Source of the DNA: Octopus sinensis
Taxonomy: Eukaryota
Length of the DNA: 64,000 nt
Direction of reading: 5' to 3'
Assembly: GCF_006345805.1 (NCBI RefSeq)
Contig: NC_043014.1
Location: 7,812,001-7,876,000, forward strand
In this document: positions 1,180 through 19,194 of the stretch, piece by piece
How positions within the stretch are numbered: the first letter of the stretch is position 1
How the letters are laid out: each line of letters begins with the position of its first letter
The notes under the pieces: generated by a model
What the model was told of the DNA's origin: nothing
The model's input: only the letters and a program-made list of their open reading frames with translations
The model's database searches: none
Translations under genes and position numbers: made by a program

Positions 1180-1217
<38 letters not shown>

Positions 1218-1240
1218 CACCAGTACTACTACCACCACTA

Positions 1241-1303
<63 letters not shown>

Positions 1304-1316: not shown

Positions 1317-1870
1317 ACCAGTCATCCAACTTCTATTGGTGTACTATGAGACTCAGAACTTCATTGTGTTTTTAAGTAACTAAAGCGAGTTGATCATTTG
1401 CATGTTCTACCAAGAGGCAGCAATCTGCTAATTGGATTGGTTGACCCTTGACTGACCATTGGCCGAAGAGGTTCCCCCACCTAGACTGTCATGTAGTTTA
1501 GCGGAATGAAGATCAAAATGCCCAACACCACACACCTGCCATGCTACTCCCCATGGCTTCATTGTGACCCTTGCTCAAGGATTTTCGTCATTGAGGTTAA
1601 TTCCCTCTGTATACATACTGTTGGAAGGCTGTTGAGTCTTACGAGTTCCTCCGGCCTCTGATGGATTTTGATTTTCTTCCAGCAGGGTGACCAAATTACC
1701 CCCCCTCACTAAGCAAGCTTCGTGGGGTTACCAGTTTCATTGCTGACAATCTGACCATGTGATAGGTTGAACTGTGTTATATGTTACCTGTTTGTGTGTG
1801 TATGTTTGCGTTTGCGTTTGTGTGTGTGTGTGTTTATATACTGATGCAGTGAAATGTTTTCCTTTTCCAG

Positions 1871-2024
1871 TCTGCTATTAGTATTGTAAAGAATTCTCCA
1901 AAATCAATAACAAATAAGTATGATCGACAGAAGAGACTAAGCTCTGATAAGCTACGGGCCTATCAGTGGAAGATTGCACACAATTCAGTCGATGCTCGGA
2001 TACTGGCTAAATTAGCAACAAATG
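1871..2024 (+). CDS. Most 5' identifiable coding exon (SAISIVKNSPKS...ILAKLATN)
   Basis: Acceptor ccttttccAG (1869-70) and donor G|GTATGT (2025). The 154 nt are stop-free in the frame required by the next exon. No ATG, so upstream exons probably lie outside the window. Confidence 0.7.
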
Positions 2025-2254
2025 GTATGTATACTCTTTTTTAACTCTTTTTACTTGTTTCAGTCATTTGACTGCGGCCATGCTGGAGCACCGCCTTTAA
2101 TCGAGCAACTCGACCCCGGGACTTATTCTTTTGTAAGCCCAGTACTTATTCTATCGGTCTCTTTTTGCCGAACAGCTAAGTAACAGGGACATAAACACAT
2201 CAGCATCGGTTGTCAAGCAATGCTAGGGGGACAAACACAGACATACAAACACAC

Positions 2255-2287
<33 letters not shown>

Positions 2288-3249
2288 CGACAGGCTTCTT
2301 TCAGTTTCTGTCTACCAAATCCACTCACAAGGCATTGGTCAGCCCGAGGCTATAGTAGAAGACACTCGCCCAAGGTGCCACGCAGTGGGACTGAACCCGG
2401 AACCATGTGGTTCGTAAACAAGCTACTTACCACACAGCCACTCCTGCACCTATACGATAAATCTTTTCTTTCGAATTCATTTCCACTCTGCCTCTATTTA
2501 TAAATTCCTACCATACTTTGTTGAGTGCATGGAACGACTGTGTAATTAAGAAATTTGCTTCACAAACACCTGGACCTGGGTTTGATCCTACCGAGGAATA
2601 TTTATTCTACCATAATCTTGTGATGAACTCCGTGAGAACCCGTGGAAACCCTTCAGTGTTTTAGTTGTCATGGCAATGGTGATGCTGGAGCACATGTGTG
2701 TGTATGTGTGTATGTGTATAGGTATGGGTGTATGATGTGAATTTGCCTCTACTTGCAGCTCCCTATAGAGGTGCCGTGGAAAGAATGTGCAACAGAAGGT
2801 GGCCTGAAATATTTTTTCTCCCAAGGTCTGCATCCAGTTTGAATTTTCTTCAGGTTGAGTACCCCATCCCACTCAAAAAGTCCTTGAATAAGGTTTGTTT
2901 AAGGATGTTGAACGAAACACCCACGTTTCCAGAGGTGAGTTATTCAAACCCCAAAGAATTCCTCTCAACACATGGCTATGATGCTCCCCCACTACTTCTG
3001 CTCGTGATCAGAGATGCACATATCGTCAGCCACTGAGGGACATGCTCAACTGGTTAAGGTCAAACAACTGACAAGCAAATCTGTGGTATTGAGCAGAATA
3101 TTTGCTGTAGCCCGTCTTTTATACCAAGACAAAACAATGTACATGGTAACACTTCCAATCAGTTAAGATCAGAAGTCATGAGAGCCACTGCCTGGTACTG
3201 CATCAGGGCAGTTATTATTGCTGTCATCGTCGTCATCATCATCATCATC

Positions 3250-3281
<32 letters not shown>

Positions 3282-6200
3282 CAAGAAGTTGGGCAGCTGA
3301 CAGAATCATTAGCACCTCAGGGAAAATGCTTAGCAGCATTTTGCTAATTTCTACATTCTGAGTTCAAATTTCCCTGAGGTGGACTTTGCCTTTCATCCTT
3401 TCATGATTAATAAAATAAGTACCTGTTATGTACTGAGGTCAATGTAATTGAAAAGCCAAAATTTCAGGCCTTGTGCCTTTAGTAGAAAAGATTATTATTA
3501 TTTTGGCTTGACTCAGTTTTGGTCTTACTCCTGGTAGGATTTATGTGGGAAGTAGGTTACTACCTGTAACCTTAGGTACACACAAGTTTTCAGTAGTCTT
3601 TGAAGTGCTTAGAACCCTCCTGATAATCTTTGCTGTCCCTTCAGCCATTAGTCTATATCTTTTCTTTTCTCAATGCACCAGTTGTTATAGGCATAACCTT
3701 TACTGTTCTCACACATCAATTATTATAGACACCCGGTGGCACGTAAAAAGCACCATCCAATCATGGCCGTTTGCCACCCTTGTCTGGCACCTGTGCAGGT
3801 GGCATGTAAAATGCACCCACTACACTCACAGGGTGGTTGGCGTTAGGAAGGGCATCCAGCCATAGAAACACTGCCAGATCAGACTGGGCCTGGCGCAGCC
3901 TACTGGCTTCCCAGACCCCAGTTGAACCGTCCAACCCATGCTAGCATGGAAAACGGACGTTAAACAATGATAGTTAATTAGTTAGTTAGTTAATTTTTTG
4001 GCTCAAAAAGCAAAAAAGCAAGGCCATGTAGGGGGACATGGAGTTATGTACATGGTGGTGTTCATGTAAAGAGTTCAGGCCACTTGTGGTCAAGGGAGAC
4101 TTTGAACCGAGCGGTCGTCGGCATCTTCACCATCTCGCCCGGCAGCTTATTCCACGGATCCGCGATGATGACATTACTTTCTTGCTTTATGTGATTGACT
4201 GCTTGATATATAAAATCATTCTTTGTTTTGAATTTTTTTTTTCTCCTAGTTTCATCAATCTCTGAGAAAGTAGATGAAGAACCCAAAATTGTTTTGGACA
4301 AACTGGCTGACCAATTGAAAGTATTTAAGTATTCCCACATTCTGCCCAGTGGGTTACATATGAGAGAGGCTAAAACTTTGCTCCGGGTCACTTCAAAATA
4401 CTATTGGTCATCACTGACTGAAGACATTAAAAAATGGGTAAGCAATCCTTCATCATTATCATCATCATCATCGTTTAATGTCCGCTTTCCATGCTAGCAT
4501 GGGTTAGACGAATGACTGAGTGCTGGTGAACCAGATGGCTGCACCAGGCTTCAGTCTTGATCTGGCAGAGTTTCTACAGCTGGGTGCCCTTCCTAATGCC
4601 AACCACTCCGAGAGTGTAGTGGGTGCTTTTACGTGCCACCGGCATGGGGCCAGTCAGGCAGTACTGGCAGTGACCTTGCTCGAATCTTTTACACATGCCA
4701 CTGGCACAGGTGCCAGTAAGGCGATGCTGGTAACGGTCACGCACGAATGGTGTCTTTTACGTGTCACCGGCACGAGGCCAGTCAAGCGGTACTGGCAATG
4801 ACCTCGCTCGAATCTTTTACACATGACACCGGCACAGGTGCCAGTAAGGCGATGCTGGTAACGGTCACGCACGAATGGTGTCATTTACGTGCCACGGCAT
4901 GGAGGCCAGATAGCCGCTCTGGCAACAATCATGCTCGGATGGTGCTCTTTATGGCGACGTTGGTAACGATCACATTCTAATGGTGCCTTTTAAGTGCCAC
5001 TGGCACGGAAGCTGGTTAGCCGCTCTGTCACTGATCATACTCGTATGGTGCTCTTTGCACCCCGCTAGCATGGACGCCAGTCATCGAATTTGATTTTGAT
5101 TTTGATTTTTGATTTCACTTTCAAAAATACTGTCAGGTGAGAAAATAAAAAATAAAATATGTATAGCAAAAGAATAAATTACTTGCTCCCTTTATTGAAT
5201 GGCAAGCATATTGGGTCACTATTTTGAAGGATTTTTTAAAGTCACTTATATTGACCCCTGTACTTATTTTTTAAGCCTGGTTCACATTTTAGTGACCTCT
5301 GTCGTACCACTTAGTGACAGATCATAAACACAGACCTATTTGTTTTTTGCAGCGTGGAAGGTGTTTATAAGCCATTTAAGAAACACACAAAAGCCGTTTG
5401 ATTCACTTCAACATTTAAGTTTAATTTGTCAAAATATTTTCGTCGCTTTCAGATCGCGACCTGTTCACTGACAAAAATTTGTGCTACATCGGAACAGGTC
5501 GTGGTCTTAAAGCGCCGAAAATATTTTGACAAATTAAACTTAAATGTTGAAGTGAATCGAACGGCTTTTGTGTGTTTCTTAAATGGCTTACAAACACCTT
5601 CCACGCTGCAATTGTTTTCGTTTCAGCACACGATCTCAGATCAAATTACTTGCTATGCAAGTACATCTCCGTAATATTTGTTTTTTGTTTCACACAATGT
5701 CAGGATAGACAGTCACACCCACCAGTTCAGTGACCTTTTACGCAGTTTCTCTCGGCCAGTTTCTCACACAAGGCATTGGCCAATGTGGGGCTATAGTAGA
5801 AGCCACTTGCCCAAGATGTCTCACAGTTGTCCTGGGCCTGAGACCTTGTGGTTGTTAAGCAGACTTCTTAAGCACTTAGCTATGCCTGTACTTAAAATGT
5901 ATTCACTTATCAATCAATCCTGCAAAAAACATAGAAAATCTCCAGAGCCTGTTCATGTTTTGTACTCTCTCTCTCTTTTTACTCTTTTACTTGTTTCAGT
6001 CATTTGACTGCGGCCATGCTGGAGCACCGCCTTTAGTCGAGCAAATCGACCCCGGGACTTATTCTTTGTAAGCCCAGTACTTATTCTATCGGTCTCTTTT
6101 GCCGAACCGCTAAGTTACGGGGACGTAAACACACCAGCATCGGTTGTCAAACAATGCTAGGGGGACAAACACAGACACACAAACACACACATATATATAT

Positions 6201-6814
6201 ACATATATACGACGGGCTTCTTTCAGTTTCCGTCTACCAAATCCACTCACAAGGCTTTGGTCGACCCGAGGCTATAGTAGAAGACACTTGCCCAAGGTGC
6301 CACGCAGTGGGACTGAACCCGGAACCATGTGGTTGGTAAGCAAGCTACTTACCACACAGCCACTCCTGCGCCTATAGTTTGTTCTTTGTTTTTTTATTTT
6401 ATAGGAGTACAGTATTTGAAGTATCAAAGGACATTTTCATATGACACCGCTAAAAATTGTTGTTGACAGACTTCGGCAGATATTGTTTTCACCTCATTAG
6501 ATGTCATTGATTGGTTGAAATTGCCGAAAATTAAGAAATTAAAGAGGAAATAGCTTACAAACTACAGAATTTTCTCAAGAAAGCCAAGAGAAAAAGATGT
6601 TTTATAAACACATTCTACCAGTATACGAAGTTTAAAAGTGTTTAGTTACAAAGAAATTATTTAAAAAATCTGCCGGTCAAAGCGAAAAGACCCGTATCAA
6701 AGATTAGTAACAATGGGTGTTATAGAGTTAAAATGATTATAGAGATGCTCACCCCACTATCATTATATAGTGATTTCAAGCACCTATATACTCAATCTCT
6801 CTCTGTCTCTCTCA

Positions 6815-6862
<48 letters not shown>

Positions 6863-6915
6863 TACACAAACACACACACATACACAAACACACTCACACA
6901 CACACAAACACACTC

Positions 6916-6948
<33 letters not shown>

Positions 6949-7125
6949 AACACACACACACACAAACACACAAACACACATACACACATACACACACACA
7001 TACAAACAAACACACACACAAACACACACACACAAACACACACACACAAACACACACACACAAACACACACACACACACAAACGCGCACACACACACACA
7101 AACACACATACACAAACACACACAA

Positions 7126-7161
<36 letters not shown>

Positions 7162-10100
7162 CACACACACACACACGTTAGTAATGCTTCTTTTTATTCT
7201 AACAGGTGTCTGAGTGTGAAGTTTGCCAGAAACTTCGGCAGTATCAAAATGACATTGTAAGTTCCGTTTCTTGTTATTATCTATGTTGTTGAGTTGGCCT
7301 GGTCAGTTTCAGGACACGGCCAGATTCCATCAGATGCTGTGAAATAACCATTCTTAGATATGCTACGCTTTAATTAGATCTGGAATCAGTTTGCTCTTGA
7401 AGCTGTTTGTGTGTTTTTAGGTAGATGGAGTGTAGTATATATATCTCTTTACTACCCACAAGGGGCTAAACACAGAGGGGACAAACAAGGACAGACAAAT
7501 GGATTAAGTCGATTATATCGACCCCAGTGCGTAATTAGTACTTATTTAATTGACCCTGAAAGGATGAAAGGCAAAGGCGACCTCGGCAGAATTTGAACCC
7601 AGAACGTAACGGCAGGCGAAATACCTATTTCTTTACTACCCACAAGGGGCTAAACACAGAGAAGACAAACGGATTAAGTCGATTTTATCGACCCCAGTGT
7701 GTTACTGGTACTTATTTAATCGACCCCGAAAAGATGAAAGGCAAAGTCGACCTCGGCGGAATTTGAACCCAGAACATAACAGCAGACGAAATACCCATTT
7801 CGTTACTACCCACAAGGGGCTAAACACAGAGAGCACAAACAAGGACAGACAAATGGATTAAGTCGATTATATTGACCCCAGTGCGTAATTAGTACTTATT
7901 TAATTGACCCTGAAAGGATGAAAGGCAAAGTCGACCTCGGCAGAATTTGAACCCAGAACATAACGGCAGGCAAAATACCTATTTCTTTACTACCCACAAG
8001 GGGCTAAACACAGAGGGGACAAACAATGACAGACAAACAGATTAAGTTGATTACATCGACCACAGTGCGTAACTGGTACTTATTTAATCGACCCTGAAAG
8101 GATGAAAGGCAAAGGCGACCTGGGCAGAATTTGAACCCAGAATGTAACGGCAGGCGAAATACCTATTTCTTTACTACCCACAAGGGGCTAAACACAGAGG
8201 GGACAAACACGAACAAACGGATTAAGTCGATTACATCGACCCCAGTGCATAACTGGTACTTATTCAATCAATCCCAAAAGGATGAAAGGCAAAGTCGACC
8301 TGGGTAGAATTTGAACCCAGAACGTAATGGCAGGCGAAATACCTATTTCTTTACTACCCACAAGGGGCTAAACACAGAGGGGACAAACAATGACAGACAA
8401 ACGGATTAAGTCGATTACATCGACCCTAATGCATAACTGGTACTTATTTAATCGACCCCGAAAGGATGAAAGGCAAAGTCGACCTCGGCAGAATTTGAAC
8501 CCAGAACGTAGCGGCAGACGAAATACCGCAAAGCATTTCACCCGGCATGCTAACGATTCTGCCAGTGTAGTATAGTAGTAAGAGAATGTTGTTTCCGGTT
8601 TTAATAAGTCATTTCTTGTAAAAACTGGTGAGAACAAGCATCAAGGCAGACAGCTTGAGCCCTGTGTGTCTGTTTATGCATGTTGTGTCTGAAGTCTCTT
8701 GGATTTTAAACACTTACAACTCTTTACAGTTTATCATACATGGAGTTTCATGTGATATGCTGTTGAGCTTGCCAGTCTAACAACATATCAAATGTTGACC
8801 GGCATATGGTTGCTCGATGATTTAGGAGGATATTGCATTGTAATGTATTGTATAACCTTATGACTGTTGCATATCTTTCGCAACTGAATGCACGACTATA
8901 CTATATAATTTTAATGAAGACTATACTATATAATTTTAATGAAGACTATACTATATAATTTTAATGAAGACTATACTATATAATTTTAATGAAGACTATA
9001 CTATATAATTTTAATGAAGACTATACTATATAATTTTAATGAAGACTGTACTATATAATTTTAATGAAGACTATACTATATAATTTTAATGAAAACTATA
9101 CTATATAATTTTAATGAAGACTATACTATATAATTTTAATGAAGACTATACTATATGATGTTAATGAAGACTATACTATATAATTTTAATGAAGACTATA
9201 CTATATAATTTTAATGAAGACTATACTATATAATTTTAATGAAGACTATACTATATAATTTTAATGAAAACTATACTATATAATTTTAATGAAGACTATA
9301 CTATATAATTTTAATGAAGACTATACTATATGATGTTAATGAAGACTATACTATATAATTTTAATGAAGACTATACTATATAATTTTAATGAAGACTATA
9401 CTATATATTTTAATGAAGACTATACTATATAATTTTAATGAAAACTATACTATATAATTTTAATGAAGACTATACTATAATTTTAATGAAGACTATACTA
9501 TATGATGTTAATGAAGACTATACTATATTTTTAATGAAGACTATACTATATAATTTTAATGAAGACTATACTATATAATTTTAATGAAAACTATACTATA
9601 TAATTTTAATGAAGACTATACTATATATTTTAATGAAGACTATACTATATAATTTTAATGAAGACTATACTATATATAATTTTAATGAAGACTATACTAT
9701 ATAATTTTAATGAAGACTGTACTATATAATTTTAATGAAGACTGTACTATATAATTTTAATGAAGACTATACTATATAATTTTAATGAAGACTATACTAT
9801 ATAATTTTAATGAAGACTATACTATATATTTTAATGAAGACTATACTATATAATTTTAATGAAGACTGTACTATATAATTTTAATGAAGACTATACTATA
9901 TATAATTTTAATGAAGACTATACTATATATTTTAATGAAGACTAACTATATAATTTTAATGAAGAAGACTATACTATATAATTTTAATGAAAACTATACT
10001 ATATAATTTTAATGAAGACTATACTATATAATTTTAATGAAGACTGTACTATATAATTTTAATGAAGACTATACTATATAATTTTAATGAAGACTATACT

Positions 10101-13100
10101 ATATAATTTTAATGAAGACTATACTATATAATTTTAATGAAGACTATACTATATAATTTTAATGAAAACTATACTATATAATTTTAATGAAGACTATACT
10201 ATATAATTTTATGAAGACTATACTATAATAATTTTAATGAAGACTATACTATATAATTTTAATGAAGACTATACTATATAATTTTAATGAAGACTATACT
10301 ATATGATGTTAATGAAGACTATACTATATAATTTTAATTAAACTATACTATATAATTTTAATGAAGACTATACTATATATAATTTAATGAAGACTATACT
10401 ATATAATTTAATGAAGACTATACTATATAATTTTAATGAAGACTATACTATATAATTTTAATGAAGACTATACTATATAATTTTAATGAAGACTAACTAT
10501 ATAATTTAATGAAGACTATACTATATAATTTTAATGAAGACTATCTATATAATTTTAATGAAGACTATACTATATAATTTTAATGAAGACTATACTATAT
10601 AATTTTAATGAAGACTATACTATATAATTTTAATGAAGACTATACTATTAATTTTAATGAAGACTATACTATATAATTTTAATGAAGACTATACTATATA
10701 ATTTTAATGAAGACTATACTATAAATTTTAATGAAGACATACTATATAATTTTAATGAAGACTATACTATATAATTTTAATGAAGACTATACTATATAAT
10801 TTTAATGAAGACTATACTATATAATTTTAATGAAGACTATACTATATAATTTTAATGAAGACTATACTATATAATTTTAATGAAGACTATACTATATAAT
10901 TTTAATGAAGACTATACTATATAATTTTAATGAAGACTATACTATATAATTTTAATGAAGACTATACTATATAATTTTAATGAAGACTATACTATATAAT
11001 TTTAATGAAGACTATACTATATAATTTTAATGAAGACTATACTATATGATGTTAATGAAGACTGTACTATATAATTCTTCTTCAAATCTGGTTAGGTGTT
11101 GGTTAGGTGTTGTTCCTTCTAGATTTGAATACTTTTCTTCGTGGGTCACCATGTTCAGGTTTGTTGTTTGTTCTAAGCTCTTTGTCGAAAAAGAAAGCTT
11201 TCCACCGCATTCTGCACACTAATTGGTTTGTTTTCTCCAAAAGATCACATATAAAATCCTTCATCCTGGGTATAGGTATGTCCTTTCGCGAAACATCCAG
11301 TGATATTTTATCCATCATCTTGGTACGCTACCATATAGCACATTCCTCCTGGAAATCGGAAATTAGTTGTGGTTAATGGATAATAAAACAAATGGTTTAT
11401 ACCTGGTAGCTAAATGGATTAAGTCGATTACATCGACCGCAGTGCGTAACTGGTACTTATCTAATCGACCCTGAAAGGATGAAAGGCAAAGGCGACCTCG
11501 GCAGAATTTGAACCCAGAACATAACGGCAGGTGAAATACCTATTTCTTTACTACCCACAAGGGGCTAAACACAGAGGGGACAAACAAGGACAACCGATTT
11601 CAGAGTGATCATTCGGTATACAGCAAATGAAAGACAGAAGATGGAATATACGAGAATTTATTACTAATCACGACAATTCATTTGTTATTATGAGAAGCTA
11701 ATCAGAGAATGCAGAGAACAGGGATGGAATGTCGAATATTATCACCTGGCAGTGATAGAGGCTTCATTGAAAAGAAAATGACAACGCTTTTCAAAAGAAG
11801 ATTTGTTTTTTTCTAGCCCCAAGCTGCGTAAACTAATAAGGAGAGTACAGGTGGCGGTCAAAAAAGCCAGCTTCTATATATGGCCGAAGCGGGATGACCG
11901 AAAATGGCTTGAAAGTCATAAACACGCTAACATCATTAGGTGAGACAAGCTGACTGACAGGTGACGGTCGTTTAGAAAAAGCGTGGGCTAACACTACGCG
12001 CCTTCACTACTCAGTTAAGGTGAGACAGTGTCACGTGACAACTTGCTGGGGCTGTCTGCTGGAGCCTATGTGGCAGGTATTTAAAGGGAGAAATTTGACA
12101 AGACAGTTAGTCACAGTCTGACACTCGCTGACGATACATCGAAGAGGCCAGGGAACAGAAGAAAGAAGACATGCACCCAACACCAGAGCTGAAGACACCT
12201 CCGAAAGGGGGGGCCCCGCCACGTCAAAACGGTAGAGGAGTAGGGGCCGAAACCGGACGTGGTTCCTCCTGATGATGTCTTGAGCTAACTGGATTCCATA
12301 AAGGAGCTGTTGTGGTAGCAGACCATGAAACACGGTTGTAATTTCCCTACCTATCTGTCTATTTAAGAAAATAAAGACTGGGATCCATTCATTTGACTTA
12401 AATTCTTCAAGGCTGTGCCCCAGCATGGCCGTAGTCTAATGACTGAAACTAGTAAAAGATAAAAGATCTATTTATCCACCCTGCCACTCATACATACATG
12501 TTTTGTTCCTTCTCGAGCCATGTCTGGCTCATAAGGGGCAGTTTCCTGGTTTCCTTGGCGTATAGGTTCCCCACCTGGACGGGACGCCAGTCCGTCGCAG
12601 GTGAGCTGCAAGATGCAGGAAGAAAGAGTGAGAGAAAGTTGTGGCAAAAGAGTCAGCAGAAGTTCGCCATTTCCTTCTGCCGGAGCCGCGTGGGACTTAG
12701 GTGTTTCGCTCATAAACACACACATCGCCCTGTCTGAGATTCAAACCCGCGATCCCTCGACTGCGAGTCCGCTGCTCTAACCACTAGGCCATGTGCCTCC
12801 ACTCATACATGCATACGTACATACAGTTACTTATACACACATGCACATATGCAAATGTACACATGCATGCAAATATCATCAGGTTCTTCATGTTGAATAA
12901 ATAAATATAACACAAGCTACAACTATGTGAACCCTTTTAATTGCATACCCACTGACTCTGCTCGGCTCATTTATGACTTCTACTAACAAGCAAGGGTTGC
13001 AACAGAGACGTGTGTCATTAGCAATCCATTTGGGAATGTATATCTTCATTTCATCTAGCATTTGCGTTGATTATTACTTCCACTTAATATTTCTCCTGAA

Positions 13101-13911
13101 TTAATTATTATTTTCACTCAGTCTAACTCATGGATGAATTAACCCTTTCGTCACTGCATTTATTTTGAGATGCTCTGTGTTTCTTTCAATTACTTTAAAT
13201 ATAACAAAGAATTTAGTAAAATAACTTAGTTATCATTCAGCTAATGTTAGCAACATAAATTGTGACTAAGGTTTGGTGGAAGATTTTAATTCAAAACTTA
13301 TGAAAACCAGGCATTTGTACTCAGAGCCAAAGGTGGTTTCAGCCAGGTTGGTATCAAAAGGATTAAGAATTGTTTCTCTATTATATATATTTTAACCCTT
13401 TTGTTACCATATTTCTGTTGAGATGCTCTGTGTTTCTTTCAATTAATTTTAAATATAACAAAGAATTTAATAAAATAATTTAGTTATCATTAAGCTAGTG
13501 TTAGGAACATAAATTGTGACTAAGGTTTGGTGGAAGATTTGAATTCAAAACTTATGAAAACAAGACATTTGTACTCAGAGCCAAATGTGGTTTCAGCCGA
13601 GTTGGTTAAAGCAGAAGTTTGCATCTTTTCGTAGGAATCCCAAATCATTTCAACATGTCTAACATTTTTTTTCACTGCACTTTTTTTTAGGTACAGTTGC
13701 CCAATGAAAATCCATCCTGGAAGGAGACCAATTCCATGCAGACTACAAGTTAGTTAGTCTTATTGCTTATCTGTTATTTTCATTCTTGCATCCCCATCAA
13801 TGTTCCCGCTCACCTACCTGCCACACACATGTAAATGAAAGTATATATGCTACCATCATCATCATCTTAAACAATATCCTTGTGATCATCATCATCATTC
13901 TGTAGGTATAT

Positions 13912-13963
<52 letters not shown>

Positions 13964-14628
13964 ATATGTATCAAAAGAAAAACAGGACGCAAAGGATTCT
14001 GCGGTACATATGTTTCGGGATTTATTGAATAACTTATATCAATGCATAATTGATATAACAGGTAGATCAAAAGCCTTCTTCAGCCGCGTACAATTACCAC
14101 ACTAAGGACATGTATCACATTATAGCAGGTTTGAGAAAAAGTTTGGGAAGCCCGAAACATATGTACCGCAAAATCCTTTGCGTCCTGTTTTTCTTTTGAT
14201 ACACATATCCTATCACCTATACCACTAGCTGGCATATACAGGTGCTTGCAGTTATCAAGTATTCACCCTGAATTTTTTATATATATATACATATATATAT
14301 CGCCTATCTGGATGTTTTGTTGTTTCATTTGTATCACCTAGTTGTCCAGATGTTTTGTGTTCTTGTCCCATTTGGTATTTTATATATATATATGTGCCGG
14401 TGATGATGATGATGATACACACACACACACACAAACACATATTTATATATATATATATATATACACATACATGGCCTGCTCGCTTAGCCAGCGGGGTGGC
14501 GTCATTTGAAGGCTAAAACAATGCGAAGCGCATTGTGACCAGCGATGTGTAACAACATCTGATAGCCTGGTCGGTCACGGTGATATACATACATACACAC
14601 ACACATATATATTTATATAAATAATACA

Positions 14629-14665
<37 letters not shown>

Positions 14666-14730
14666 TTTATATACATATATATATATATACATATACATAC
14701 ATACATACATACATACACACACTCACATAT

Positions 14731-14800
<70 letters not shown>

Positions 14801-15288
14801 GTTAATTGGTCATAGTTGGTGTTTATCAATATGGTTTACATATTGATACCCCTTGGTATTTAGATGCAAATGTTCGCTAGATCCAGTAGGTGGGTTATCG
14901 AACCTTTGCTGCATTTAGCTATCGTTTATGCTGCTCTAAATTAACAGAGTTGGCGTATGGTACCGATTAGATTTAACGCTTGTCCAAAGCAGCAAAAAAT
15001 TTCCCACCAATCTTCGTTGAAACATGCAAACCGAAAATTGGGTTGAACCAGCAGACATCCTGATTTCTATATCTGTTACTCTTTTACTCTTTTACTTGTT
15101 TCAGTCATTTGACTGCGGCCATGCTGGAGCACCGCCTTTAGTCGAACAAATCGACCCCGGGACTTATTCTTTGTAAGCCCAGTACTTATTCTATCGGTCT
15201 CTTTTGCCGGACCGCTAAGTGACGGGGACGTAAACACACCAGCATCGGTTGTCAAGCACTGCTAGGGGGACAAACACAGACACACATG

Positions 15289-15336
<48 letters not shown>

Positions 15337-15711
15337 CGACAGGCTTCTTTTAGTTTCCGTCTACCAAATCCACTCACAAGGCATTGGTCGGCCCGGGGCT
15401 ATAGCAGAAGACACATGCCCAAGATGCCACGCAGTGGGACTGAACCCGGAACCATGTGGTTGGTTAGCAAGCTACTTACCACACAGCCACTCCTGCGCCT
15501 ATATATATATATATATATCATCATCATCATCATCATCGTTTAGCGTCCGTTTTCCATGCTAGCACTGGTAACACATCTGCAATTTCCATTGATCAGTTTT
15601 GATTCTGATCCTCACTTGCCTCAACAGGTCTTCACAAGTAGAGTTTTGTGTCCCAAGAAGGGAAGGTATGCATACGTAGGCTGGCTCCATCCCATGTAGA
15701 AGGCCACAGGT

Positions 15712-15742
<31 letters not shown>

Positions 15743-18512
15743 GTGGAGGCGCAATGGCCCAGTGGTTAGGGCAGCGGACTCGCGGTCATAGGATCGCCGT
15801 TTCAATTCCCAGACCGGGCGTTGTTAGTGTTTATTGAGCGAAAACACCTAAAAGCTCCACGAGTCTCTGGCAGGGATGGTGGTGATCCCTGCTGTACTCT
15901 TTCACCACTCTTTCTTCTGTTGGCCTGCTCGCTTAGCCAGCGGGGTGGTGTCATTCGAAGGCTAAAACAATGCGAATGCATTGTGACCAGCGATGTGTAA
16001 CAACATCTGATGGTCTGGTCGGTCACGTGATATATATACATAGGATGATCCAATACACTTATATATGTATATTGTACTATATCATGAGGATGATGATGAT
16101 GATGATCATCTTTTAATGTCCACTTTCCATGCTGGCATGGGTTGGACGGTTTGACTGAGGACTGGCAATCCAGGTGGCTGCTCCAGGCTCCAATCTGTTC
16201 TGGCAATGTTTCTACAGCTAGATGCCCTTCCTTACGCCAATCACTCCGAGAGTGTAGTGGGTGCTTTTTACACATCTCCAGCACGGGTCTGTCTGTCTGC
16301 CTTTTAGCATTTTTGTTCTATCCACACAACTACATAAATATGGAACCAGAAAGCTATGAGACCAACGAACCCGAAGCTTAAAAGAGCCAGAAAGCAAATG
16401 CTTGGAGTAATTTCTTCTGCCTCTTTTATGTTCTACCGAGGTTGACTTTGCCTTTCATCCTTTTAAGGTCGATAAAATAAACACCATTTGAGCACTGGGA
16501 TTAATGTGATCAACTTCCGCCCTCCCCCACAATTGATGGCCTTGTGCCGGACTTTGAAACTATTATCATTCTTATTCTTATTCTTATTTGCAGGTGACTG
16601 TGGTGTATGGTCCAGAGAAAGCATAGAGCTTCTTCTGAGGTCGTTAACACAATATTTTATGATGAAACCGTCTCATATCACAAGTGAGTCTGAATTATGG
16701 ATGGAAATCTCAAACAAAATGAAACTCCTTGGTTTAAACACAACGTCTTTACAATGCCAACAGAAATGGCAAGAACTCAAACAAAAATACGTCCATTTGA
16801 AAATGTCGAAGAATTCTTCAGAGAGCAGCAATCAAGTTTGGCCTTTCCTTGGTGTCTTGAACATGATGTACTATGCTTTCCAAAATCCAAGGTTAGAGGG
16901 CTCATCTTCACTTCCGAGTCCCTTTGATTCAGTTTTTGCTATTGATGTTGATGGCGCCAACTCTTCAGTGGATCTGCTTTCATCTTGTGATTCCCATATT
17001 ATCCCTGACAGTTTTTCTTCTCGAATACTTTTGGATAATTACCGTGATGTAAGTACTGTGGAGAACACTGAGAATCTTCTGCAAGATCATATAGATAACC
17101 AGGCTGATAGAATTTGGCAAAACAATGTGTGGAATTCGTCACTGAGATCAGAGGGAGAAGAAGACAACCAGGTGGTGGAGAAAAATTTTCTGAAACAAAT
17201 AAGTTTGGAAGAGGAGGTGTGCAAACAGTATTGGGACAATTTGGAGAGCAGCTCCTTGTCCTTGCAGAATAGTTTCCGTCCCAGTCCTAATGGTAATGGT
17301 AATGGCAGTGTCATTGCTGTAATGCCGTCATTCAATGATGACATCCATAACAGTGTCGAAGTAATTACTGACTCAGAACTTCAAAGGGAGATAAAGAAAG
17401 AGGCTGACAACTCTTTTGAACAAACAACTATTCCAAGCATATCTGTGATGGAGAAAGCTAATGAACAAAGTTGGACATCGGAAGATGCCAATCTTGGAAT
17501 TTTCAGCATTAAAATGGAACCTAGCAATAATGAGGCAAACTTATATATGGAAATTTCGACTCCTCAGGATTTGAATCCAGCATCATCAACATCTGTTTCA
17601 TCATCCACATCATCGTCATCATCATCATCATCAACATCATCATCTTCAATACCATCGTCGTCATCGTCATCATCATCATCATCATCATTATTGTTGCCAT
17701 CAGCAGTATCATCGATAACACCATTAGCTATAGCCCCGACTTCTACTACTACTAGTAGTACTACAACAACAACCACTACCACAATATCAGGTTGTGATGC
17801 TAATGGTGCAAATTTACAGAACAGTGACAAAATTGTTTTAGGAGAATTACCTACAGAACCCGTCGGAACTAAAAATGATTGTGGTTTAGAGCTCTTTTGT
17901 CAACAGGCATCTGTGCTTTCTGAAAATATTAACAACATCTGTGATTCTGCAAGTGATAATGGCATTAACCATGATATTTCAAACATCACTAGATTACAAG
18001 ATATCACTTCTGAGACCAACTCTTCAAAACCCCTTCAACACAATACAACTTTAAATAGTAATCAGTCAAGCTCTGAAATTCCTAATATGCCAATCACCAG
18101 TCACTCAGAGACTCTCTGCTTGGATCTGGGTGCTACTGGGTCTAACATTTTCTCTGGACAAAATTCCGAACTTTCTAAGGGGTTATTAGCTAATAAGACA
18201 CTGAACTTGTTGGACTCGCCTTTGCCTTTAGCTGTGGGTGAGCTCAGAAGAGATAAAAATGAGAGCAATAATAGTGAAGCTGTACCACATTGGTTCCAGC
18301 TCTATGTTCAGCAATACCAACAAGAAGCTGAAATTCGAGAGAAACAACTAAAAGATTTCCAAACTAAAATTCTAGAACTTTTCAAGGAAACAAATCAACA
18401 ATTAGCCACTCTAATTGAAGTACAAAAAAATGAAAAGATGAGGCAGGAAAAGAAAGATGAAGAATTTAGATCTAATCTGCTTGCTATTTTGCAAGAGAAT
18501 CTAAAGAAATGA
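1871..18512 (+). CDS. Spliced, 5'-incomplete gene: integrase H2C2 zinc-binding domain (GIN1/Ginger/Gypsy-like) + Myb/SANT-like trihelix DNA-binding domain + Ser-rich region + C-terminal coiled coil; at least 789 aa
   Basis: Five exons joined by hand. All have GT-AG sites and compatible phases (1,0,0,1), and the total of 154+188+51+58+1919=2370 nt is open to TGA at 18510-18512. The junction peptide HILPSGLHMREAKTLLRVTSKYYWSSLTEDIKKW|VSECEVCQ forms a complete H-H-C-C motif only after splicing. Confidence 0.85.
2035..2452 (-). mobile_element. SINE family A (tRNA head, CORE-like GGGCAAGTG block, internal TA/TG microsatellite, second module)
   Basis: The minus strand starts GCAGGAGTGGCTGTGTGGTAAG...GGTTCAGTCCC (Pol III A/B boxes). 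Other copies: 5965-6375(-), 15080-15500(-), 21405-21808(-), 23106-24080(+), 24940-25140(-), 31530-31760(-), 37443-37850(+), 43240-43900(-), 49470-50102(-), 52965-53056(-). Confidence 0.9.
3972..4165 (-). mobile_element. CR1-clade LINE 3' end fragment
   Basis: DPWNKLPGEMVKMPTTARFKVSLDHKWPELF plus a 3' UTR and (TAAC/TTAAC)-type tail. Same family as 19195-19737. Confidence 0.85.
4250..4437 (+). CDS. Exon encoding the His-His half of the integrase zinc-binding domain
   Basis: Acceptor ttttttttttctcctAG (4248-49) and donor TGG|GTAAGC (4438). Encodes ...KYSHILPSGLHMREAKTLLRVTSKYYWSSLTEDIKKW, matching H-x-G-H..kT..rv...YYW.....Di..W. Confidence 0.9.
5347..5612. mobile_element. Palindromic fold-back MITE-like element (~117-bp arms, ~25-nt loop)
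   Basis: gcagcgtggaaggtgttt...cgacctgttc (5350-5466) is the reverse complement, with few mismatches, of gaacaggtcg...aaacaccttccacgctgc (5492-5609). Confidence 0.85.
6420..6720. mobile_element. Non-autonomous interspersed repeat, homologous (inverted) to 60930-61140
   Basis: Shared blocks ttttataaacacattctaccagtatacgaagtttaaaagtgtttagttac and gattggttgaaattgc. Confidence 0.7.
6800..7176. repeat. Imperfect (CA)n tract immediately upstream of the 51-nt exon
   Basis: Directly visible; it ends ~30 nt before the acceptor at 7205. Confidence 0.95.
7206..7256 (+). CDS. 51-nt exon encoding the Cys-Cys half of the zinc-binding domain (VSECEVCQKLRQYQNDI)
   Basis: Acceptor tttttattctaacAG (7204-05) and donor ATT|GTAAGT (7257). 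Phase 0-0. Supplies CxxCQ exactly where the domain needs it. Confidence 0.9.
7440..8566 (-). mobile_element. SINE family B, six head-to-tail ~180-bp units under one tRNA head
   Basis: The repeated unit joins at GAAATACCTATTTCTTT. It carries GCCTTTCATCCTTTCGGGGTCGATAAA(T)AAGTACC, which resembles the Meta-SINE central domain as I recall it. Other arrays or copies: 11410-11590, 38510-38700, 39285-40050(+), 42380-42985(-), 47905-48120(+), 54180-54410(-), 59610-60025(-), 61300-61520(-), 61765-62410(-); degenerate at 3285-3480 and 16400-16560. Confidence 0.9.
8894..11076. repeat. 25-bp minisatellite (GACTATACTATATAATTTTAATGAA)n, ~87 units, intronic
   Basis: Directly visible tandem array with recurrent variants (GAAAAC, TGATGTT, GACTGT). 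Confidence 0.98.
11095..11330 (-). pseudogene. Penelope-like element ORF N-terminal fragment
   Basis: SRKDIPIPRMKDFICDLLEKTNQLVCRMRWKAFFF matches the KNIPIP...LI.K.E....RMRWKA.FF motif typical of the N-terminus of invertebrate Penelope-like RT proteins. Confidence 0.7.
11600..12375 (+). mobile_element. Probable Penelope-like pseudo-LTR with TATA-like box, two hammerhead-like cores and AATAAA
   Basis: GTATTTAAAGGG at ~12077; CTGAAGA...GAAAC (12189-12253) and CTGATGA...GAAAC (12269-12331); AATAAA at ~12371. Confidence 0.5.
13143..13362. mobile_element. piggyBac-type MITE with TTAA TSD
   Basis: TTAA-CCCTTTCG ... CAAAAGGA-TTAA. A second tandem copy lies at 13396-13610 and an inverted copy at 22091-22699. 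Confidence 0.85.
13691..13748 (+). CDS. 58-nt linker exon (VQLPNENPSWKETNSMQTT)
   Basis: Acceptor ttttttttAG (13689-90) and donor AA|GTTAGT (13749). Phase 0 in and phase 1 out, which bridges the previous exon to the large terminal exon. Confidence 0.75.
14001..14087 (-). ncRNA. Hammerhead-ribozyme-like motif with long stem II, inside a 52-bp inverted-repeat-bracketed element (13968-14202)
   Basis: Minus strand: GCGG-CUGAAGA-(60 nt incl. 10-bp hairpin)-GAAAC-AUAU-GUA-CCGC. Stem I is 4 bp and stem III is palindromic (ACAUAUGU). Confidence 0.55.
15745..16030 (+). mobile_element. SINE family C (tRNA-derived head GGCGCAATGGCCCAGTGGTTAGGGCAGCGGACTCGCGG)
   Basis: Pol III A/B boxes followed by a conserved body. 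Copies: 14473-14583 fragment, 40509-40862(+), 41335-41650(+), 44483-44853(-), 50683-51060(-), 53548-53930(+), 54945-55321(-); related subfamily at 12470-12800(-) and 40893-41160(+). Confidence 0.9.
16594..18512 (+). CDS. Large terminal exon: Myb/SANT-like domain (~16608-16870), Ser/Thr-rich disordered region, coiled-coil C-terminus
   Basis: Acceptor ttcttattcttatttgcAG (16592-93). WSRESIELLL...LWMEISNKMKLLGLNTTSLQCQQKWQELKQKY...WPFLGVLNMMY fits the trihelix/Myb_DNA-bind_4 pattern. The 1.9-kb frame has no stops. The C-terminus reads PHWFQLYVQQYQQEAEIREKQL... and is helical. Confidence 0.9.
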
Positions 18513-19194
18513 AGCATTAAAATATGTCTGATTGTTGTTATTATTGTTATTAATGTTGTTTTTATTTTTTTCTTGTTATTGCAAATATAGTTATTATTTT
18601 GAAGGTAATACATTGGCAGATTTGGTAGAAGAAAGGACCTTGTGATGTCCCCTATGTTCTGTACTGACTTTTCCTTTCATCTTTTCAGGGTCATCATCAT
18701 CGTTTAACGTCCGTTTTCCATGCTAGCATGGGTTGGACGGTTCAACTGGGGTCTGTGAAGACAGAAGGCTGCACCAGGCTCCAGTCTGATCTGGCAGTGT
18801 TTCTACTGCTGGATGCCCTTCCTAACGCCAACCACTCCATGAGTGTAGTGGGTGCTTTTTACGTGCCACCTGCACAGGTGCCAGACGAGGCTGGCAAACG
18901 GCCACGATCAGATGGTGCTTTTTATGTGCCACCGGCATGGGGGTCAGACGAGGCAGGCAACGGCCACAATCGGATGGTGCTTTTTACGTGCCAGTGCTGG
19001 GTGAATATTATAATTGGTGATACCTCCACCTTCTGAAAGTGCCTGTCCCTAATTTAAAAATCATAAAATGTGTAAGAATATGTTTGGCAGAATTGATAAA
19101 ACACCCTAGAAAATGTGTGACAGTATTTTGCTTTCTGTCAGAATTGACTTCACTATACAGGGTCCTATTAATCAACCTTGTATTTTATTCCTAC

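What the first reader, a model, noticed from the sequence alone, without database searches (positions are those of the whole stretch)
1871..18512. Hidden five-exon gene fusing a retroelement-type integrase H2C2 zinc finger to a Myb/SANT (trihelix) DNA-binding domain
Seen: four small exons buried in TE debris splice in frame into the 1.9-kb ORF and produce HILPSGLHMREAKTLLRVTSKYYWSSLTEDIKKW|VSECEVCQ, followed ~40 aa later by a Myb/SANT-like domain. Established: this H2C2 motif is the N-terminal domain of Gypsy, Ginger and GIN1 integrases, and Myb/SANT-like (MSANTD-type) domains are carried by PIF/Harbinger transposons and their domesticated derivatives. Inference: this is a domesticated chimeric gene built from two transposon-type modules. 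The integrase catalytic core is absent, and the zinc domain may act as a multimerisation module for a transcription factor or TE repressor. I do not recognise this architecture from any named gene.
Basis: partly seen in the sequence, partly recalled or inferred. Interest (0 to 1): 0.85.

Follow-up and report, generated by a model that had tools for sequence, protein, structure and literature searches.

The report
Octopus integrase-finger/Myb fusion gene
The window holds the last five of seven coding exons of a real, conserved octopus gene that joins the zinc-binding N-terminal domain of a Ginger1/Gypsy-type integrase to a Myb/SANT-like DNA-binding domain; it is already in RefSeq under a misleading name and has uncharacterised look-alikes in a prawn and a frog.

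Summary
Five exons (1871-2024, 4250-4437, 7206-7256, 13691-13748, 16594-18512), all with canonical AG/GT sites, splice in frame to 789 aa. Pfam finds Integrase_H2C2 (3.7e-14) and, about 34 aa after it, Myb_DNA-bind_4 (9.9e-13). There is no integrase core.

The gene is not hidden. The window is Octopus sinensis, and RefSeq XP_029647405.2 (862 aa, named "serine-rich adhesin for platelets-like") matches the 789 aa exactly. It adds 73 aa from two exons that lie upstream of the window.

Orthologs exist in Argonauta hians (same seven exons; dN/dS 0.06-0.4) and in two unidentified species. One of those is an intron-less 2.5-kb contig that reads like a spliced mRNA.

The architecture is rare but not unique. 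A Macrobrachium gene and a Discoglossus frog gene also have H2C2 followed by Myb/SANT.

All three share a phase-0 intron between the HH and CC halves of the finger and a phase-1 intron about 30 aa upstream. A wallaby integrase-like gene shares both. Ginger1 DNA transposons and their domesticated Gin genes are multi-exon, so this suggests a Ginger1-type origin rather than an LTR-retroelement one.

Most likely function (inferred): a nuclear DNA-binding regulator. This is a new variant of a known kind; interest is moderate.

The parts
1871..2024 (+). It encodes SAISIVKNSP...LAKLATN plus one base and has no start codon. The intron after it is phase 1.
   Evidence: The acceptor ttccag and the donor gtatgt are read directly. 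The exon is identical to XP_029647405.2 residues 74-124. It is 82% identical in Argonauta and 61% in the distant homolog P0002.
4250..4437 (+). Coding exon 4. It carries the HH half of the Integrase_H2C2 domain (domain part 4312-4437: H-x6-H ...YYW...KKW). The intron after it is phase 0.
   Evidence: tblastn with P0002 gives 1e-13. About 25 Gypsy- or Ginger-type H2C2 proteins hit only this exon within the gene.
7206..7256 (+). Coding exon 5. It carries the CC half of the H2C2 domain (7206-7232, VSECEVCQK) and the start of the linker. Its acceptor lies about 30 nt after a long (AC)n-rich microsatellite.
   Evidence: The intron position and phase are identical in Argonauta, Macrobrachium, Discoglossus and a wallaby gene.
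13691..13748 (+). Coding exon 6, 19 codons plus one base (VQLPNENPSWKETNSMQTT). This is a poorly conserved linker. The intron after it is phase 1.
   Evidence: It was the only candidate in a scan for phase, polypyrimidine tract and donor that resembles P0002. It matches RefSeq. It is 30% identical in Argonauta.
16594..18512 (+). Last coding exon (639 codons plus the stop at 18510-18512).
   Evidence: It is 100% identical to the RefSeq protein.
16608..16850 (+). Myb/SANT-like (trihelix-type) DNA-binding domain, PF13837.
   Evidence: Pfam 9.9e-13. There is a weak match to the Arabidopsis GT-1 trihelix domain 2JMW (E 0.024). The AlphaFold segment 231-294 has pLDDT 64-80 and three helices. The three Trp residues are invariant among the cephalopod sequences. 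dN/dS is 0.06.
17388..17522 (+). Two conserved short motifs, EIKKE (17388-17402) and IKMEP (17508-17522), inside an otherwise disordered and fast-evolving middle region. Both fit the psi-K-x-E SUMOylation consensus.
   Evidence: K491, E493 and K530, E532, P533 are invariant columns in the four-sequence alignment. The coordinates were checked. The SUMO reading is inference from the known consensus.
17580..17789 (+). Ser/Thr-rich low-complexity run. It is the likely cause of the RefSeq name 'serine-rich adhesin for platelets-like'.
   Evidence: The region is absent from P0002 and unalignable in Argonauta. pLDDT is below 30.
18288..18509 (+). Conserved C-terminal long helix (a probable coiled coil) that starts at the P-x-W-F motif.
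   Evidence: A single helix spans residues 789-861 with pLDDT 71-92. It is 46% identical to P0002 and 79% to Argonauta, with dN/dS 0.09. The Myb-only protein P0040 has a weakly similar collinear motif.

Best explanation
This is the 3' 16.6 kb of Octopus sinensis LOC115221371. It is a single-copy-looking host gene with seven coding exons and is conserved among cephalopods.

The protein (862 aa) contains, in order:
- a conserved basic N-terminal helix;
- the zinc-binding H2C2 N-terminal domain of a Ginger1/Gypsy-type integrase, with no catalytic core;
- a short linker;
- a Myb/SANT-like trihelix DNA-binding domain;
- a long disordered region with two conserved psi-K-x-E motifs;
- a C-terminal coiled-coil helix.

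Origin (inferred). The N-terminal exons of a multi-exon Ginger1-like transposase gene were joined by splicing to the body of a free-standing Myb_DNA-bind_4 plus coiled-coil gene. The DDE core was lost. The same layout with the same intron positions occurs in a prawn and a frog. Either the fusion is old, or this kind of capture has recurred.

Function (inferred, not shown). The protein is a nuclear, sequence-specific DNA-binding regulator, probably a repressor. The Myb domain contacts DNA. The coiled coil and the zinc domain provide dimerisation or higher-order assembly, or partner binding.
For: Gene model:
- Canonical splice sites and an in-frame model.
- Exact identity to the RefSeq protein.

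Domains:
- Both Pfam domains score above their curated cut-offs.
- H, H, C and C are invariant across cephalopod, prawn and frog sequences.
- hhalign of the cephalopod N-termini against GIN-like H2C2 proteins gives probability 99.2% over 63 columns.

Conservation in cephalopods:
- Argonauta has all seven exons at the same junctions, with an intact H2C2 exon in the genome.
- NG86 dN/dS against Argonauta: H2C2 exons 0.16, Myb 0.06, C-terminal helix 0.09, middle region 0.40.
- A 731-aa homolog (P0002, 34% identity) is collinear over the whole length.
- P0002 sits on a 2514-nt intron-less contig. Its similarity to a related genomic contig (L005) stops exactly at a canonical acceptor. That acceptor is at the same phase-1 position as octopus e4/e5. 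So the contig looks like a spliced mRNA.

Rarity:
- An exhaustive phmmer search of 1.84 billion representatives found only four family members. Of the 44 other hits, only two have the same architecture.

Origin:
- Intron maps: the phase-0 intron two residues before the first Cys is identical in octopus, prawn, frog and a wallaby integrase-like gene.
- The phase-1 intron 29-31 residues before the first His is shared by octopus, prawn and frog. The wallaby exon boundary falls in the same place, but I did not determine its phase.
- A phase-1 intron 4-5 residues before Myb helix 1 is shared by octopus and prawn.
- Ginger1 transposase genes carry introns, and three of these are conserved in Gin-1 and Gin-2 (PMC2836005). 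Ginger1 elements are multi-exon DNA transposons (PMC12863088).
- There is no rve remnant in the introns.

Structure:
- AlphaFold is confident only for the N-terminal helix, the Myb domain and the C-terminal helix.
Against: - I saw no RNA evidence for O. sinensis itself. The RefSeq model is a prediction.
- The source organisms of P0002 and P0005 are unknown. Calling them decapodiform cephalopods is a guess from the divergence level.
- dS against Argonauta is saturated (1-2.5), so the ratios are rough.
- Copy number in the whole octopus genome could not be searched.
- Synteny with Argonauta could not be shown within the 64 kb.
- The H2C2 segment was modelled with low confidence (pLDDT 30-40). 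Its fold rests on sequence alone.
- I could not see where the three conserved Ginger1/Gin introns of Bao et al. lie, because the figure is not held. Matching them to the introns here is indirect, through one wallaby gene.
- W|V (TGG|GTN) looks like a proto-splice site, so parallel intron gain is possible.
- DNA binding, zinc binding, oligomerisation, nuclear location and SUMOylation are all untested.
Confidence: 0.72

Rival explanations
1. The H2C2-Myb gene is one ancient bilaterian gene. A single fusion occurred before the protostome-deuterostome split. It was kept in cephalopods, some decapod crustaceans and some amphibians and lost or unrecognised elsewhere. It is then neither a cephalopod innovation nor a recurrent capture.
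For: - The domain order and spacing are the same, and single alignments span both domains: P0003 against the frog P0009 at 1e-14 over 175 aa, and the phmmer stretches.
- One exact and one near-exact shared intron are found in all three phyla. A third is shared by octopus and prawn, directly before the Myb domain.
- All three proteins end in helical, coiled-coil-like sequence.
Against: - The two N-terminal introns are also in a wallaby gene without Myb. They could therefore come from a multi-exon Ginger1 progenitor each time.
- The frog Myb domain scores as PF13873 rather than PF13837.
- Similarity outside the two domains is nil.
- The distribution is extremely patchy in a 1.84-billion-protein library, although a single-sequence search is insensitive.
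Confidence: 0.3
2. It is a transposon-control factor. The orphan integrase N-terminal domain docks onto the catalytic cores of active Ginger or Gypsy integrases, or onto their DNA ends, and poisons intasome assembly. The Myb domain tethers the protein to chromatin or to element sequences.
For: - In retroviral and spumaviral intasomes the HHCC N-terminal domain works in trans on another subunit's core and promotes multimerisation. This is established knowledge; the PFV integrase N-terminal domain is the closest solved H2C2 match.
- The octopus genome around the gene is full of transposon debris, including an integrase fragment at 31104-31358.
- The conserved psi-K-x-E motifs fit a silencing factor.
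Against: - There is no direct evidence.
- Purifying selection is steady, with no sign of the diversification expected of an arms-race gene.
- The Imagin authors argue the same way against a direct anti-transposon role for their gene (PMC12863088).
Confidence: 0.12
3. The fusion is an annotation artefact. The H2C2 exons belong to a decaying transposon copy or to a separate upstream gene, and only the 1.9-kb Myb exon is a real gene.
For: - The O. vulgaris annotation calls only the last exon, from an internal Met (P0001, 546 aa).
- The Argonauta model skips 26 aa of the finger.
- I saw no octopus transcript.
Against: - P0002 is one uninterrupted 731-aa ORF on an intron-less contig. It covers every exon in order.
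- The small exons are under purifying selection (dN/dS 0.11 combined) and keep their phases in Argonauta.
- The last exon begins in phase 1 at a strong acceptor and has no in-frame ATG before the Myb domain.
Confidence: 0.04
4. It is an active or recently active mobile element that encodes an H2C2-Myb protein.
For: Both domain types occur in transposon proteins. The window is rich in repeats.
Against: - The gene spans 35.6 kb in octopus and 11 kb in Argonauta, with the same seven exons.
- There is no DDE core.
- The window holds no second copy.
- The O. sinensis protein is alone in its 90%-identity cluster, and no paralogs appeared in the library search.
Confidence: 0.02

Closest known systems
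Gin-1/GIN1 and Gin-2 (vertebrate genes domesticated from Ginger1 DNA transposons; Bao et al. 2010, PMC2836005)
   Same: - The N-terminal H2C2 zinc domain is of the Ginger1/Gypsy type.
- They are multi-exon host genes.
- Introns lie in and before the finger at positions shared with a marsupial integrase-like gene.
- They are under purifying selection.
   Different: - Gin genes keep the whole integrase: DDE-type core and GPY/F.
- The octopus gene keeps only the N-terminal domain and replaces the rest with Myb/SANT, a disordered region and a coiled coil.
- The YPYY motif is not recognisable in cephalopods.
Imagin (malacostracan gene domesticated from Ginger1; PMC12863088)
   Same: - It is an invertebrate, single-copy, multi-exon domesticated Ginger1 derivative.
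- It retains H2C2 and has lost catalysis.
- Its authors also propose a scaffold or multimerisation role for H2C2.
- Amphipod Imagin has even lost the core and ends in a disordered region.
   Different: - Imagin has no Myb domain and keeps the dead core fold in decapods.
- It is a different locus from the Macrobrachium H2C2-Myb gene (XP_064115938.1 against XP_064114372.1).
- Imagin protein is cytoplasmic in oocytes.
Uncharacterised H2C2-Myb proteins of Macrobrachium nipponense and M. rosenbergii (XP_064114372.1, XP_066949214.1) and Discoglossus pictus (KAM4651530.1)
   Same: - They have the same two domains in the same order with a 25-35 aa linker.
- They share intron positions and phases.
- They have a helical C-terminus.
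- They are multi-exon genes of 22-42 kb.
   Different: - Identity to the octopus protein is 15-25%, and only within the domains.
- They keep a YPYY-like LYY motif that cephalopods lack.
- The frog domain is PF13873.
- They have no counterpart of the cephalopod N-terminal basic helix or the conserved middle motifs.
Free-standing animal Myb_DNA-bind_4 proteins with a C-terminal coiled coil (MSANTD-type; plant trihelix GT factors)
   Same: - The Myb domain scores as PF13837, with a weak match to GT-1.
- The Myb-only protein P0040 matches the Myb domain at 2e-11. It has a collinear P-x-W-F...QQ motif at the start of its C-terminal helix.
   Different: - None of these carries an integrase zinc domain.
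- Orthology to any named MSANTD gene was not tested. That resemblance is from memory.
Host-transposase fusion genes formed by splicing (for example SETMAR, KRBA2, SCAND3/ZBED9, NYNRIN)
   Same: The principle is the same: a transposon-derived domain is joined to host exons to make a chimeric regulator.
   Different: - In those genes the transposase or integrase part usually supplies the DNA-binding or core domain at the C-terminus.
- Here only the small N-terminal zinc domain survives. It sits upstream of a separate DNA-binding domain.

Membership tests
Integrase_H2C2 (PF17921) domain proteins | Profile match above Pfam's gathering score | tested here: met
   53 bits against 25.5, E 3.7e-14. 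P0002 scores 44 bits. hhalign to GIN-like H2C2 proteins gives 99.2%.
Integrase_H2C2 (PF17921) domain proteins | H-x(3-7)-H-x(23-32)-C-x2-C zinc ligands | tested here: met
   The pattern is H-x6-H-x29-C-x2-C. All four ligands are invariant in cephalopod, prawn and frog sequences.
Integrase_H2C2 (PF17921) domain proteins | Zinc-dependent helical fold | tested here: inconclusive
   AlphaFold with a four-sequence alignment gave pLDDT 30-40 for this segment. Zinc binding is not testable here.
Functional Gypsy/Ginger integrase or transposase | DDE catalytic core (rve) | tested here: not met
   No rve match at E up to 1-10 in any part of the protein. tblastn with 17 rve-bearing proteins finds no core remnant between 1871 and 18512.
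Ginger1-derived host genes (Gin-1, Gin-2, Imagin) | Intron positions and phases inherited from a multi-exon Ginger1 transposase gene | tested here: inconclusive
   Two introns, in and before H2C2, are shared with a wallaby integrase-like gene and with the prawn and frog genes. The positions of the three published conserved introns are in a figure I could not read.
Ginger1-derived host genes (Gin-1, Gin-2, Imagin) | YPYY motif upstream of the zinc finger | tested here: not met
   Cephalopods have SSISEK or GGTSEK where the prawn and frog have LLYY or DLYY.
Ginger1-derived host genes (Gin-1, Gin-2, Imagin) | Phylogenetic placement of the integrase sequence within Ginger1 | not tested
   Only about 55 alignable residues remain. 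The best hits lack reverse transcriptase (P0006-P0010), but the margin over Gypsy pol proteins is small.
Myb_DNA-bind_4 / trihelix (PF13837) | Profile match above the gathering score | tested here: met
   48.8 bits against 27.
Myb_DNA-bind_4 / trihelix (PF13837) | Three helices, each with a conserved aromatic residue (Trp) | tested here: met
   W156, W186 and W209 (789-aa numbering) are invariant. Three helices are predicted at pLDDT 64-80.
Myb_DNA-bind_4 / trihelix (PF13837) | Sequence-specific DNA binding | not testable with these tools
   Needs EMSA, DAP-seq or CUT&RUN.
Domesticated transposon-derived host gene | Orthologs in several species with conserved exon structure | tested here: met
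   Argonauta has the same seven exons. L005 has the same phase-1 acceptor.
Domesticated transposon-derived host gene | Purifying selection | tested here: met
   dN/dS is 0.06-0.40 by region (NG86). dS is saturated, so the values are rough.
Domesticated transposon-derived host gene | Single copy and conserved synteny | tested here: inconclusive
   No second copy in the window and no paralogs in the library. The whole genome was not searchable. The Argonauta neighbours (a C2H2 gene and a Na/K-ATPase beta gene) are not within the 64 kb. O. vulgaris shows a partial duplicate of the last exon.
Domesticated transposon-derived host gene | Expression as a spliced mRNA | tested here: inconclusive
   Met for the relative P0002/L001. 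Not tested for O. sinensis.
Serine-rich adhesin for platelets (the RefSeq name) | Bacterial cell-wall-anchored serine-rich repeat glycoprotein with a signal peptide and binding region | tested here: not met
   The only resemblance is a 70-residue Ser/Thr run. No adhesin family matched in Pfam. The name is a low-complexity artefact.

The most novel reading that the evidence does not exclude
H2C2-Myb genes form an old, so far unnamed animal gene family, born once from the N-terminal exons of a Ginger1 transposase spliced onto a Myb/coiled-coil gene. The orphan integrase N-terminal domain is kept because it recognises integrase cores or element ends. The protein would then be a DNA-tethered inhibitor or silencer of Ginger/Gypsy-type elements in cephalopods, crustaceans and amphibians.
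Probability: 0.1. Interest if true: 0.75.

Novelty: new variant of a known kind. Interest (0 to 1): 0.48.

Why it matters
- Domesticated integrase genes described so far (Gin-1, Gin-2, Imagin, KRBA2, SCAND3, NYNRIN) keep the integrase core. Here only the zinc-binding N-terminal domain is kept, and it is joined to a separate DNA-binding domain. This gives a natural test of what that domain does on its own.
- The same layout, with shared intron positions, in a mollusc, a crustacean and a vertebrate points to one of two things. Either this is an unrecognised old gene family, or multi-exon transposons repeatedly donate their first exons to host genes.
- Few transposon-derived regulators are documented in cephalopods.
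- In practice, the RefSeq name is wrong. The O. vulgaris and Argonauta models are truncated or mis-spliced.

Tried and rejected
1. The third homologous-protein search, with a five-sequence H2C2-linker-Myb alignment, returned nothing, not even the octopus protein. I treat this as a tool failure, not as evidence.
2. I suspected that the conserved N-terminal basic helix (VNRSTIWRRQ...ARNRLK), or the e1 motif QKRL...W, descends from the N-terminal extension of GIN-like integrases (QKRIVRSQAKNHIW in the prawn). hhalign aligned only the 63 columns around H2C2, so this is not supported. Pfam finds nothing in that region.
3. Synteny between Octopus and Argonauta: tblastx of the Argonauta flanks gave only shared SINE-like repeats.
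4. The full-length AlphaFold model (mean pLDDT 41) is too poor in the H2C2 part for a fold search.
5. I tried to identify the organisms behind SRR27666080 and ERZ21867824 through the literature. No paper holds these accessions, the LOC number or the XP number.
6. Literature searches for the domain combination found nothing. The survey of transposon-derived transcription factors in Metazoa (PMC10027918) does not list this architecture.
7. The gene structure of a Myb-only relative (P0020) could not be fetched. So I do not know whether the phase-1 intron before the Myb domain pre-dates the fusion.
8. Rfam and tRNA scans of the window were empty.

Full report
**1. The observation**

The window is animal DNA rich in repeats, about 40% G+C. 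The 2025-nt ORF at 16488-18512 is by far the longest in the window.

HILPSGLH...DIKKW ends at 4437 in front of gtaagc. VSECEVCQ begins at 7206 behind ...ttctaacag.

I rebuilt the model from the sequence:

| Exon | Window coordinates |
|---|---|
| e1 | 1871-2024 |
| e2 | 4250-4437 |
| e3 | 7206-7256 |
| e4 | 13691-13748 |
| e5 | 16594-18512 |

- Every acceptor has a polypyrimidine tract and AG. Every donor is GTAAGT-like.
- The phases fit, and the product is 789 aa plus stop.
- e4 is a 58-nt exon. A scan for phase and splice signals left few candidates. This one also resembles the corresponding stretch of a distant homolog.
- Pfam gives Integrase_H2C2 at 3.7e-14 on e2+e3 and Myb_DNA-bind_4 at 9.9e-13 at the start of e5. 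There is no integrase core anywhere.

**2.

- A profile search returned XP_029647405.2 of Octopus sinensis (P0003, 862 aa, "serine-rich adhesin for platelets-like", LOC115221371). It is 100% identical over the 789 aa, and both Pfam domains are precomputed for it.
- Its locus (GCA_006345805.1, CM016876.1) spans 35.6 kb. Window position equals L003 position minus 27133.
- Two further coding exons lie upstream of the window. They encode 73 residues, including the start codon.
- e1 indeed starts at an acceptor and has no ATG.
- The RefSeq name is explained by a 70-residue Ser/Thr run at 17580-17789. Nothing else resembles a bacterial adhesin.

**3. Relatives in cephalopods**

*Argonauta hians*
- Its protein P0004 is 53-61% identical. 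The genome holds all seven exons with the same junctions.
- The deposited model skips 26 residues of the finger by using an internal donor, but the genomic exon is open and conserved.
- Pairwise dN/dS (NG86) is 0.16 for the H2C2 exons, 0.06 for the Myb domain, 0.09 for the C-terminal helix and 0.40 for the middle region. dS is saturated, so the values are rough, but they are clearly below 1.

*Two unidentified species*
- P0002 (731 aa, 34% identity) is collinear from the N-terminal basic helix to the last residue.
- It sits as one uninterrupted ORF on a 2514-nt Logan contig from run SRR27666080.
- A related genomic contig (L005, ENA ERZ21867824; P0005, 60% identical to P0002) matches that contig only from nucleotide 901 onward.
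- At that point L005 has ttttttcttgcag|GT..., the same phase-1 position as the octopus e4/e5 junction.
- So L001 behaves as a spliced mRNA, and the intron is conserved in that lineage too.
- I could not identify these two organisms. The divergence pattern suggests decapodiform cephalopods, but that is a guess.

*Octopus vulgaris*
- Its annotation calls only the last exon, from an internal Met (P0001).
- That assembly also shows two copies of the 3' part of the exon about 12 kb apart.

**4. How rare is the architecture?**

- An exhaustive phmmer search of 1.84 billion representative proteins with P0002 gave 48 hits. Only four of them are family members.
- Of the other 44, 39 carry H2C2. These are mostly Gypsy pol proteins or integrase-like proteins without reverse transcriptase. 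Six carry Myb_DNA-bind_4.
- Only two combine the domains:
  - P0044 from Macrobrachium nipponense, with a copy more than 90% identical in M. rosenbergii;
  - P0009 from the frog Discoglossus pictus (H2C2 plus Myb_DNA-bind_5).
- All are labelled uncharacterised.
- The octopus and frog proteins align in one 175-residue stretch across both domains (1e-14 pairwise).
- No paper in the library mentions the combination.

**5. Intron positions point to a Ginger1-type source**

I rebuilt the prawn and frog gene models so that they reproduce the deposited proteins exactly. Introns are given as (last complete residue, phase):

| Gene | Introns |
|---|---|
| Octopus | (35,0) (73,0) (124,1) (187,0) (204,0) (223,1) |
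| Prawn | (103,1) (168,0) (200,1) (282,0) |
| Frog | (40,1) (104,0) (128,0) (266,1) |

- **Phase-0 intron inside H2C2.** It falls between W/Y and V/I, two residues before the first Cys (KKW|VSEC, MDY|ISKC, SKW|VSEC). It is at the identical aligned position in all three.
- **Phase-1 intron upstream.** It lies 29, 31 and 30 residues before the first His.
- **Phase-1 intron before Myb.** It lies 5 residues (octopus) and 4 residues (prawn) before the first aromatic residue of the Myb domain.
- **Control.** I mapped a wallaby gene with H2C2 and a decayed core but no Myb (P0018, XP_072456078.1). It has exon boundaries at the first two positions...ALEG|HNLMF and TKW|VKQC. I did not determine the phase of its upstream boundary.

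What the literature says:
- Bao et al. report that Ginger1 transposase genes have one to four introns.
- They also report that three introns are conserved in position and phase between Ginger1-5_HM, Gin-1 and Gin-2. They used this to derive those host genes from Ginger1 (PMC2836005).
- The Imagin paper likewise calls Ginger1 elements multi-exon DNA transposons (PMC12863088).

What follows:
- The intron that splits the finger is therefore not simply a mark of long residence in the host. It fits descent from a multi-exon Ginger1-like transposase gene rather than from an intron-less LTR retrotransposon.
- I could not see the published figure, so the equation with the three published introns is indirect.
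- TGG|GT is a plausible proto-splice site, so parallel gain cannot be excluded.
- The introns of the octopus gene hold no remnant of an integrase core.

**6. The other half of the protein**

- The Myb domain matches free-standing Myb_DNA-bind_4 proteins.
- One of them (P0040) also has, collinearly, a D/E-x-P-x-W-F...QQ motif at the start of a C-terminal helix, like the cephalopod proteins. The Myb match is 2e-11. The second block is weak, at 0.28.
- The nearest solved structure by sequence is the Arabidopsis GT-1 trihelix domain (E 0.024). For H2C2 it is the N-terminal domain of prototype foamy virus integrase (E 0.27).
- AlphaFold2 with a four-sequence alignment is confident only for an N-terminal helix (about residues 40-75), the Myb three-helix unit (231-294) and one long C-terminal helix (789-861). 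The rest, including H2C2, is low confidence.
- Within the disordered middle, two motifs are invariant in all lineages: EIK[KQ]E and [IFV]K[MT]EP. Both fit the psi-K-x-E SUMO consensus.

**7. Most likely mechanism**

*Shown:* a conserved, spliced gene under purifying selection. It encodes H2C2, then Myb/SANT, then a disordered region, then a coiled-coil helix, with no catalytic core.

*Inferred:*
- The protein is a nuclear, sequence-specific DNA-binding regulator.
- The Myb domain binds DNA, and the C-terminal helix dimerises.
- By analogy with integrases, the zinc domain adds zinc-dependent self-association or binds a partner.
- The conserved SUMO-type motifs suggest a repressor.
- The gene probably arose when the first exons of a Ginger1-like transposase were spliced to a Myb/coiled-coil gene.

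Whether that happened once, before bilaterians split, or several times cannot be decided with the data I could reach. A role against transposons remains possible but unsupported.

**8. Verdict**

- It is not a hidden gene, and the window cuts it at the 5' end.
- The architecture is not unique to cephalopods.
- It is best described as a new variant among domesticated Ginger1-derived genes. It is uncharacterised and unnamed, and of moderate interest.

Noticed in passing
L002 (O. vulgaris OX597833.1:11893470-11915110), against window 16830-27317: The O. vulgaris assembly has two copies of the 3' part of the last exon and its downstream sequence, about 12 kb apart. An inverted segment homologous to window 28270-30112 lies between them. 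The second copy starts inside the Myb domain (window 16830). Both copies are annotated as single-exon genes of 546-549 aa. This is either a segmental duplication or an assembly artefact.
   Followed up: partly
L004 8100-8282 (Argonauta hians BAAFZT010000021.1): The deposited Argonauta protein (P0004) lacks 26 residues of the H2C2 finger because an internal GT was used as donor. The genomic exon is open and encodes the complete finger. This is probably a mis-prediction, though it could be a real alternative isoform.
   Followed up: partly
window 17580-17789: The RefSeq product name 'serine-rich adhesin for platelets-like' rests only on a Ser/Thr low-complexity run. The name is misleading.
   Followed up: yes
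window 2044-2452, 5980-6374, 15085-15501, 21406-21808, 23650-24068, 37445-37840, 43500-43896, 49721-50103, 63169-63562: There are at least nine copies (83-93% alike, both orientations) of a SINE-like repeat of about 400 bp. Three of them lie in the introns of the gene. No tRNA or Rfam match was found.
   Followed up: partly
window 198-520, 3811-3885, 4520-4801, 18728-19036, 20842-21207, 24439-24725, 36364-36689: A second repeat family of about 300 bp has a conserved core whose translation reads ...GWMPFL.PT.P.... It is also present next to the Argonauta ortholog, so it is shared across octopods.
   Followed up: partly
window 6733-7176: A long (AC)n-rich microsatellite ends about 30 nt before the acceptor of the 51-nt exon that carries the CxxC half of the zinc finger.
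   Followed up: no
window 30255-30791 (-), 30935-31358 (+), 32950-34687 (-): Transposon debris lies downstream of the gene. It includes a piggyBac-type zf-Tnp_2 ORF, a stop-riddled Gypsy-type integrase-core fragment, and a non-LTR reverse transcriptase (RVT_1 plus zf-RVT) next to poly-Met/Ile low-complexity sequence.
   Followed up: partly
window 19113-19658 (+) and 4062-4160 (-): A 181-aa ORF with no Pfam match ends in LDPWNKLPDEIVKMPMTAQFKVSLDQKWPDLFA. A related fragment lies in antisense about 90 nt upstream of exon e2. It is probably the 3' end of a retroelement ORF.
   Followed up: no
window 1017-1325: A trinucleotide repeat reads as poly-Ser/poly-Val on one strand and poly-Leu/Pro/Tyr on the other, just upstream of e1. 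It is non-coding intron sequence of the same gene.
   Followed up: no
P0007, P0008, P0006, P0010 (hits): Several uncharacterised animal proteins carry two or three tandem H2C2 domains. Examples are a krill protein with two fingers and no core, and an anchovy protein with THAP plus three H2C2 domains. Orphan or multiplied integrase N-terminal domains may be a wider phenomenon.
   Followed up: no
The search for homologous proteins with the five-sequence fragment alignment A2 returned no hit at all, not even the octopus protein that is in the database. This looks like a tool problem, not a biological result.
   Followed up: no
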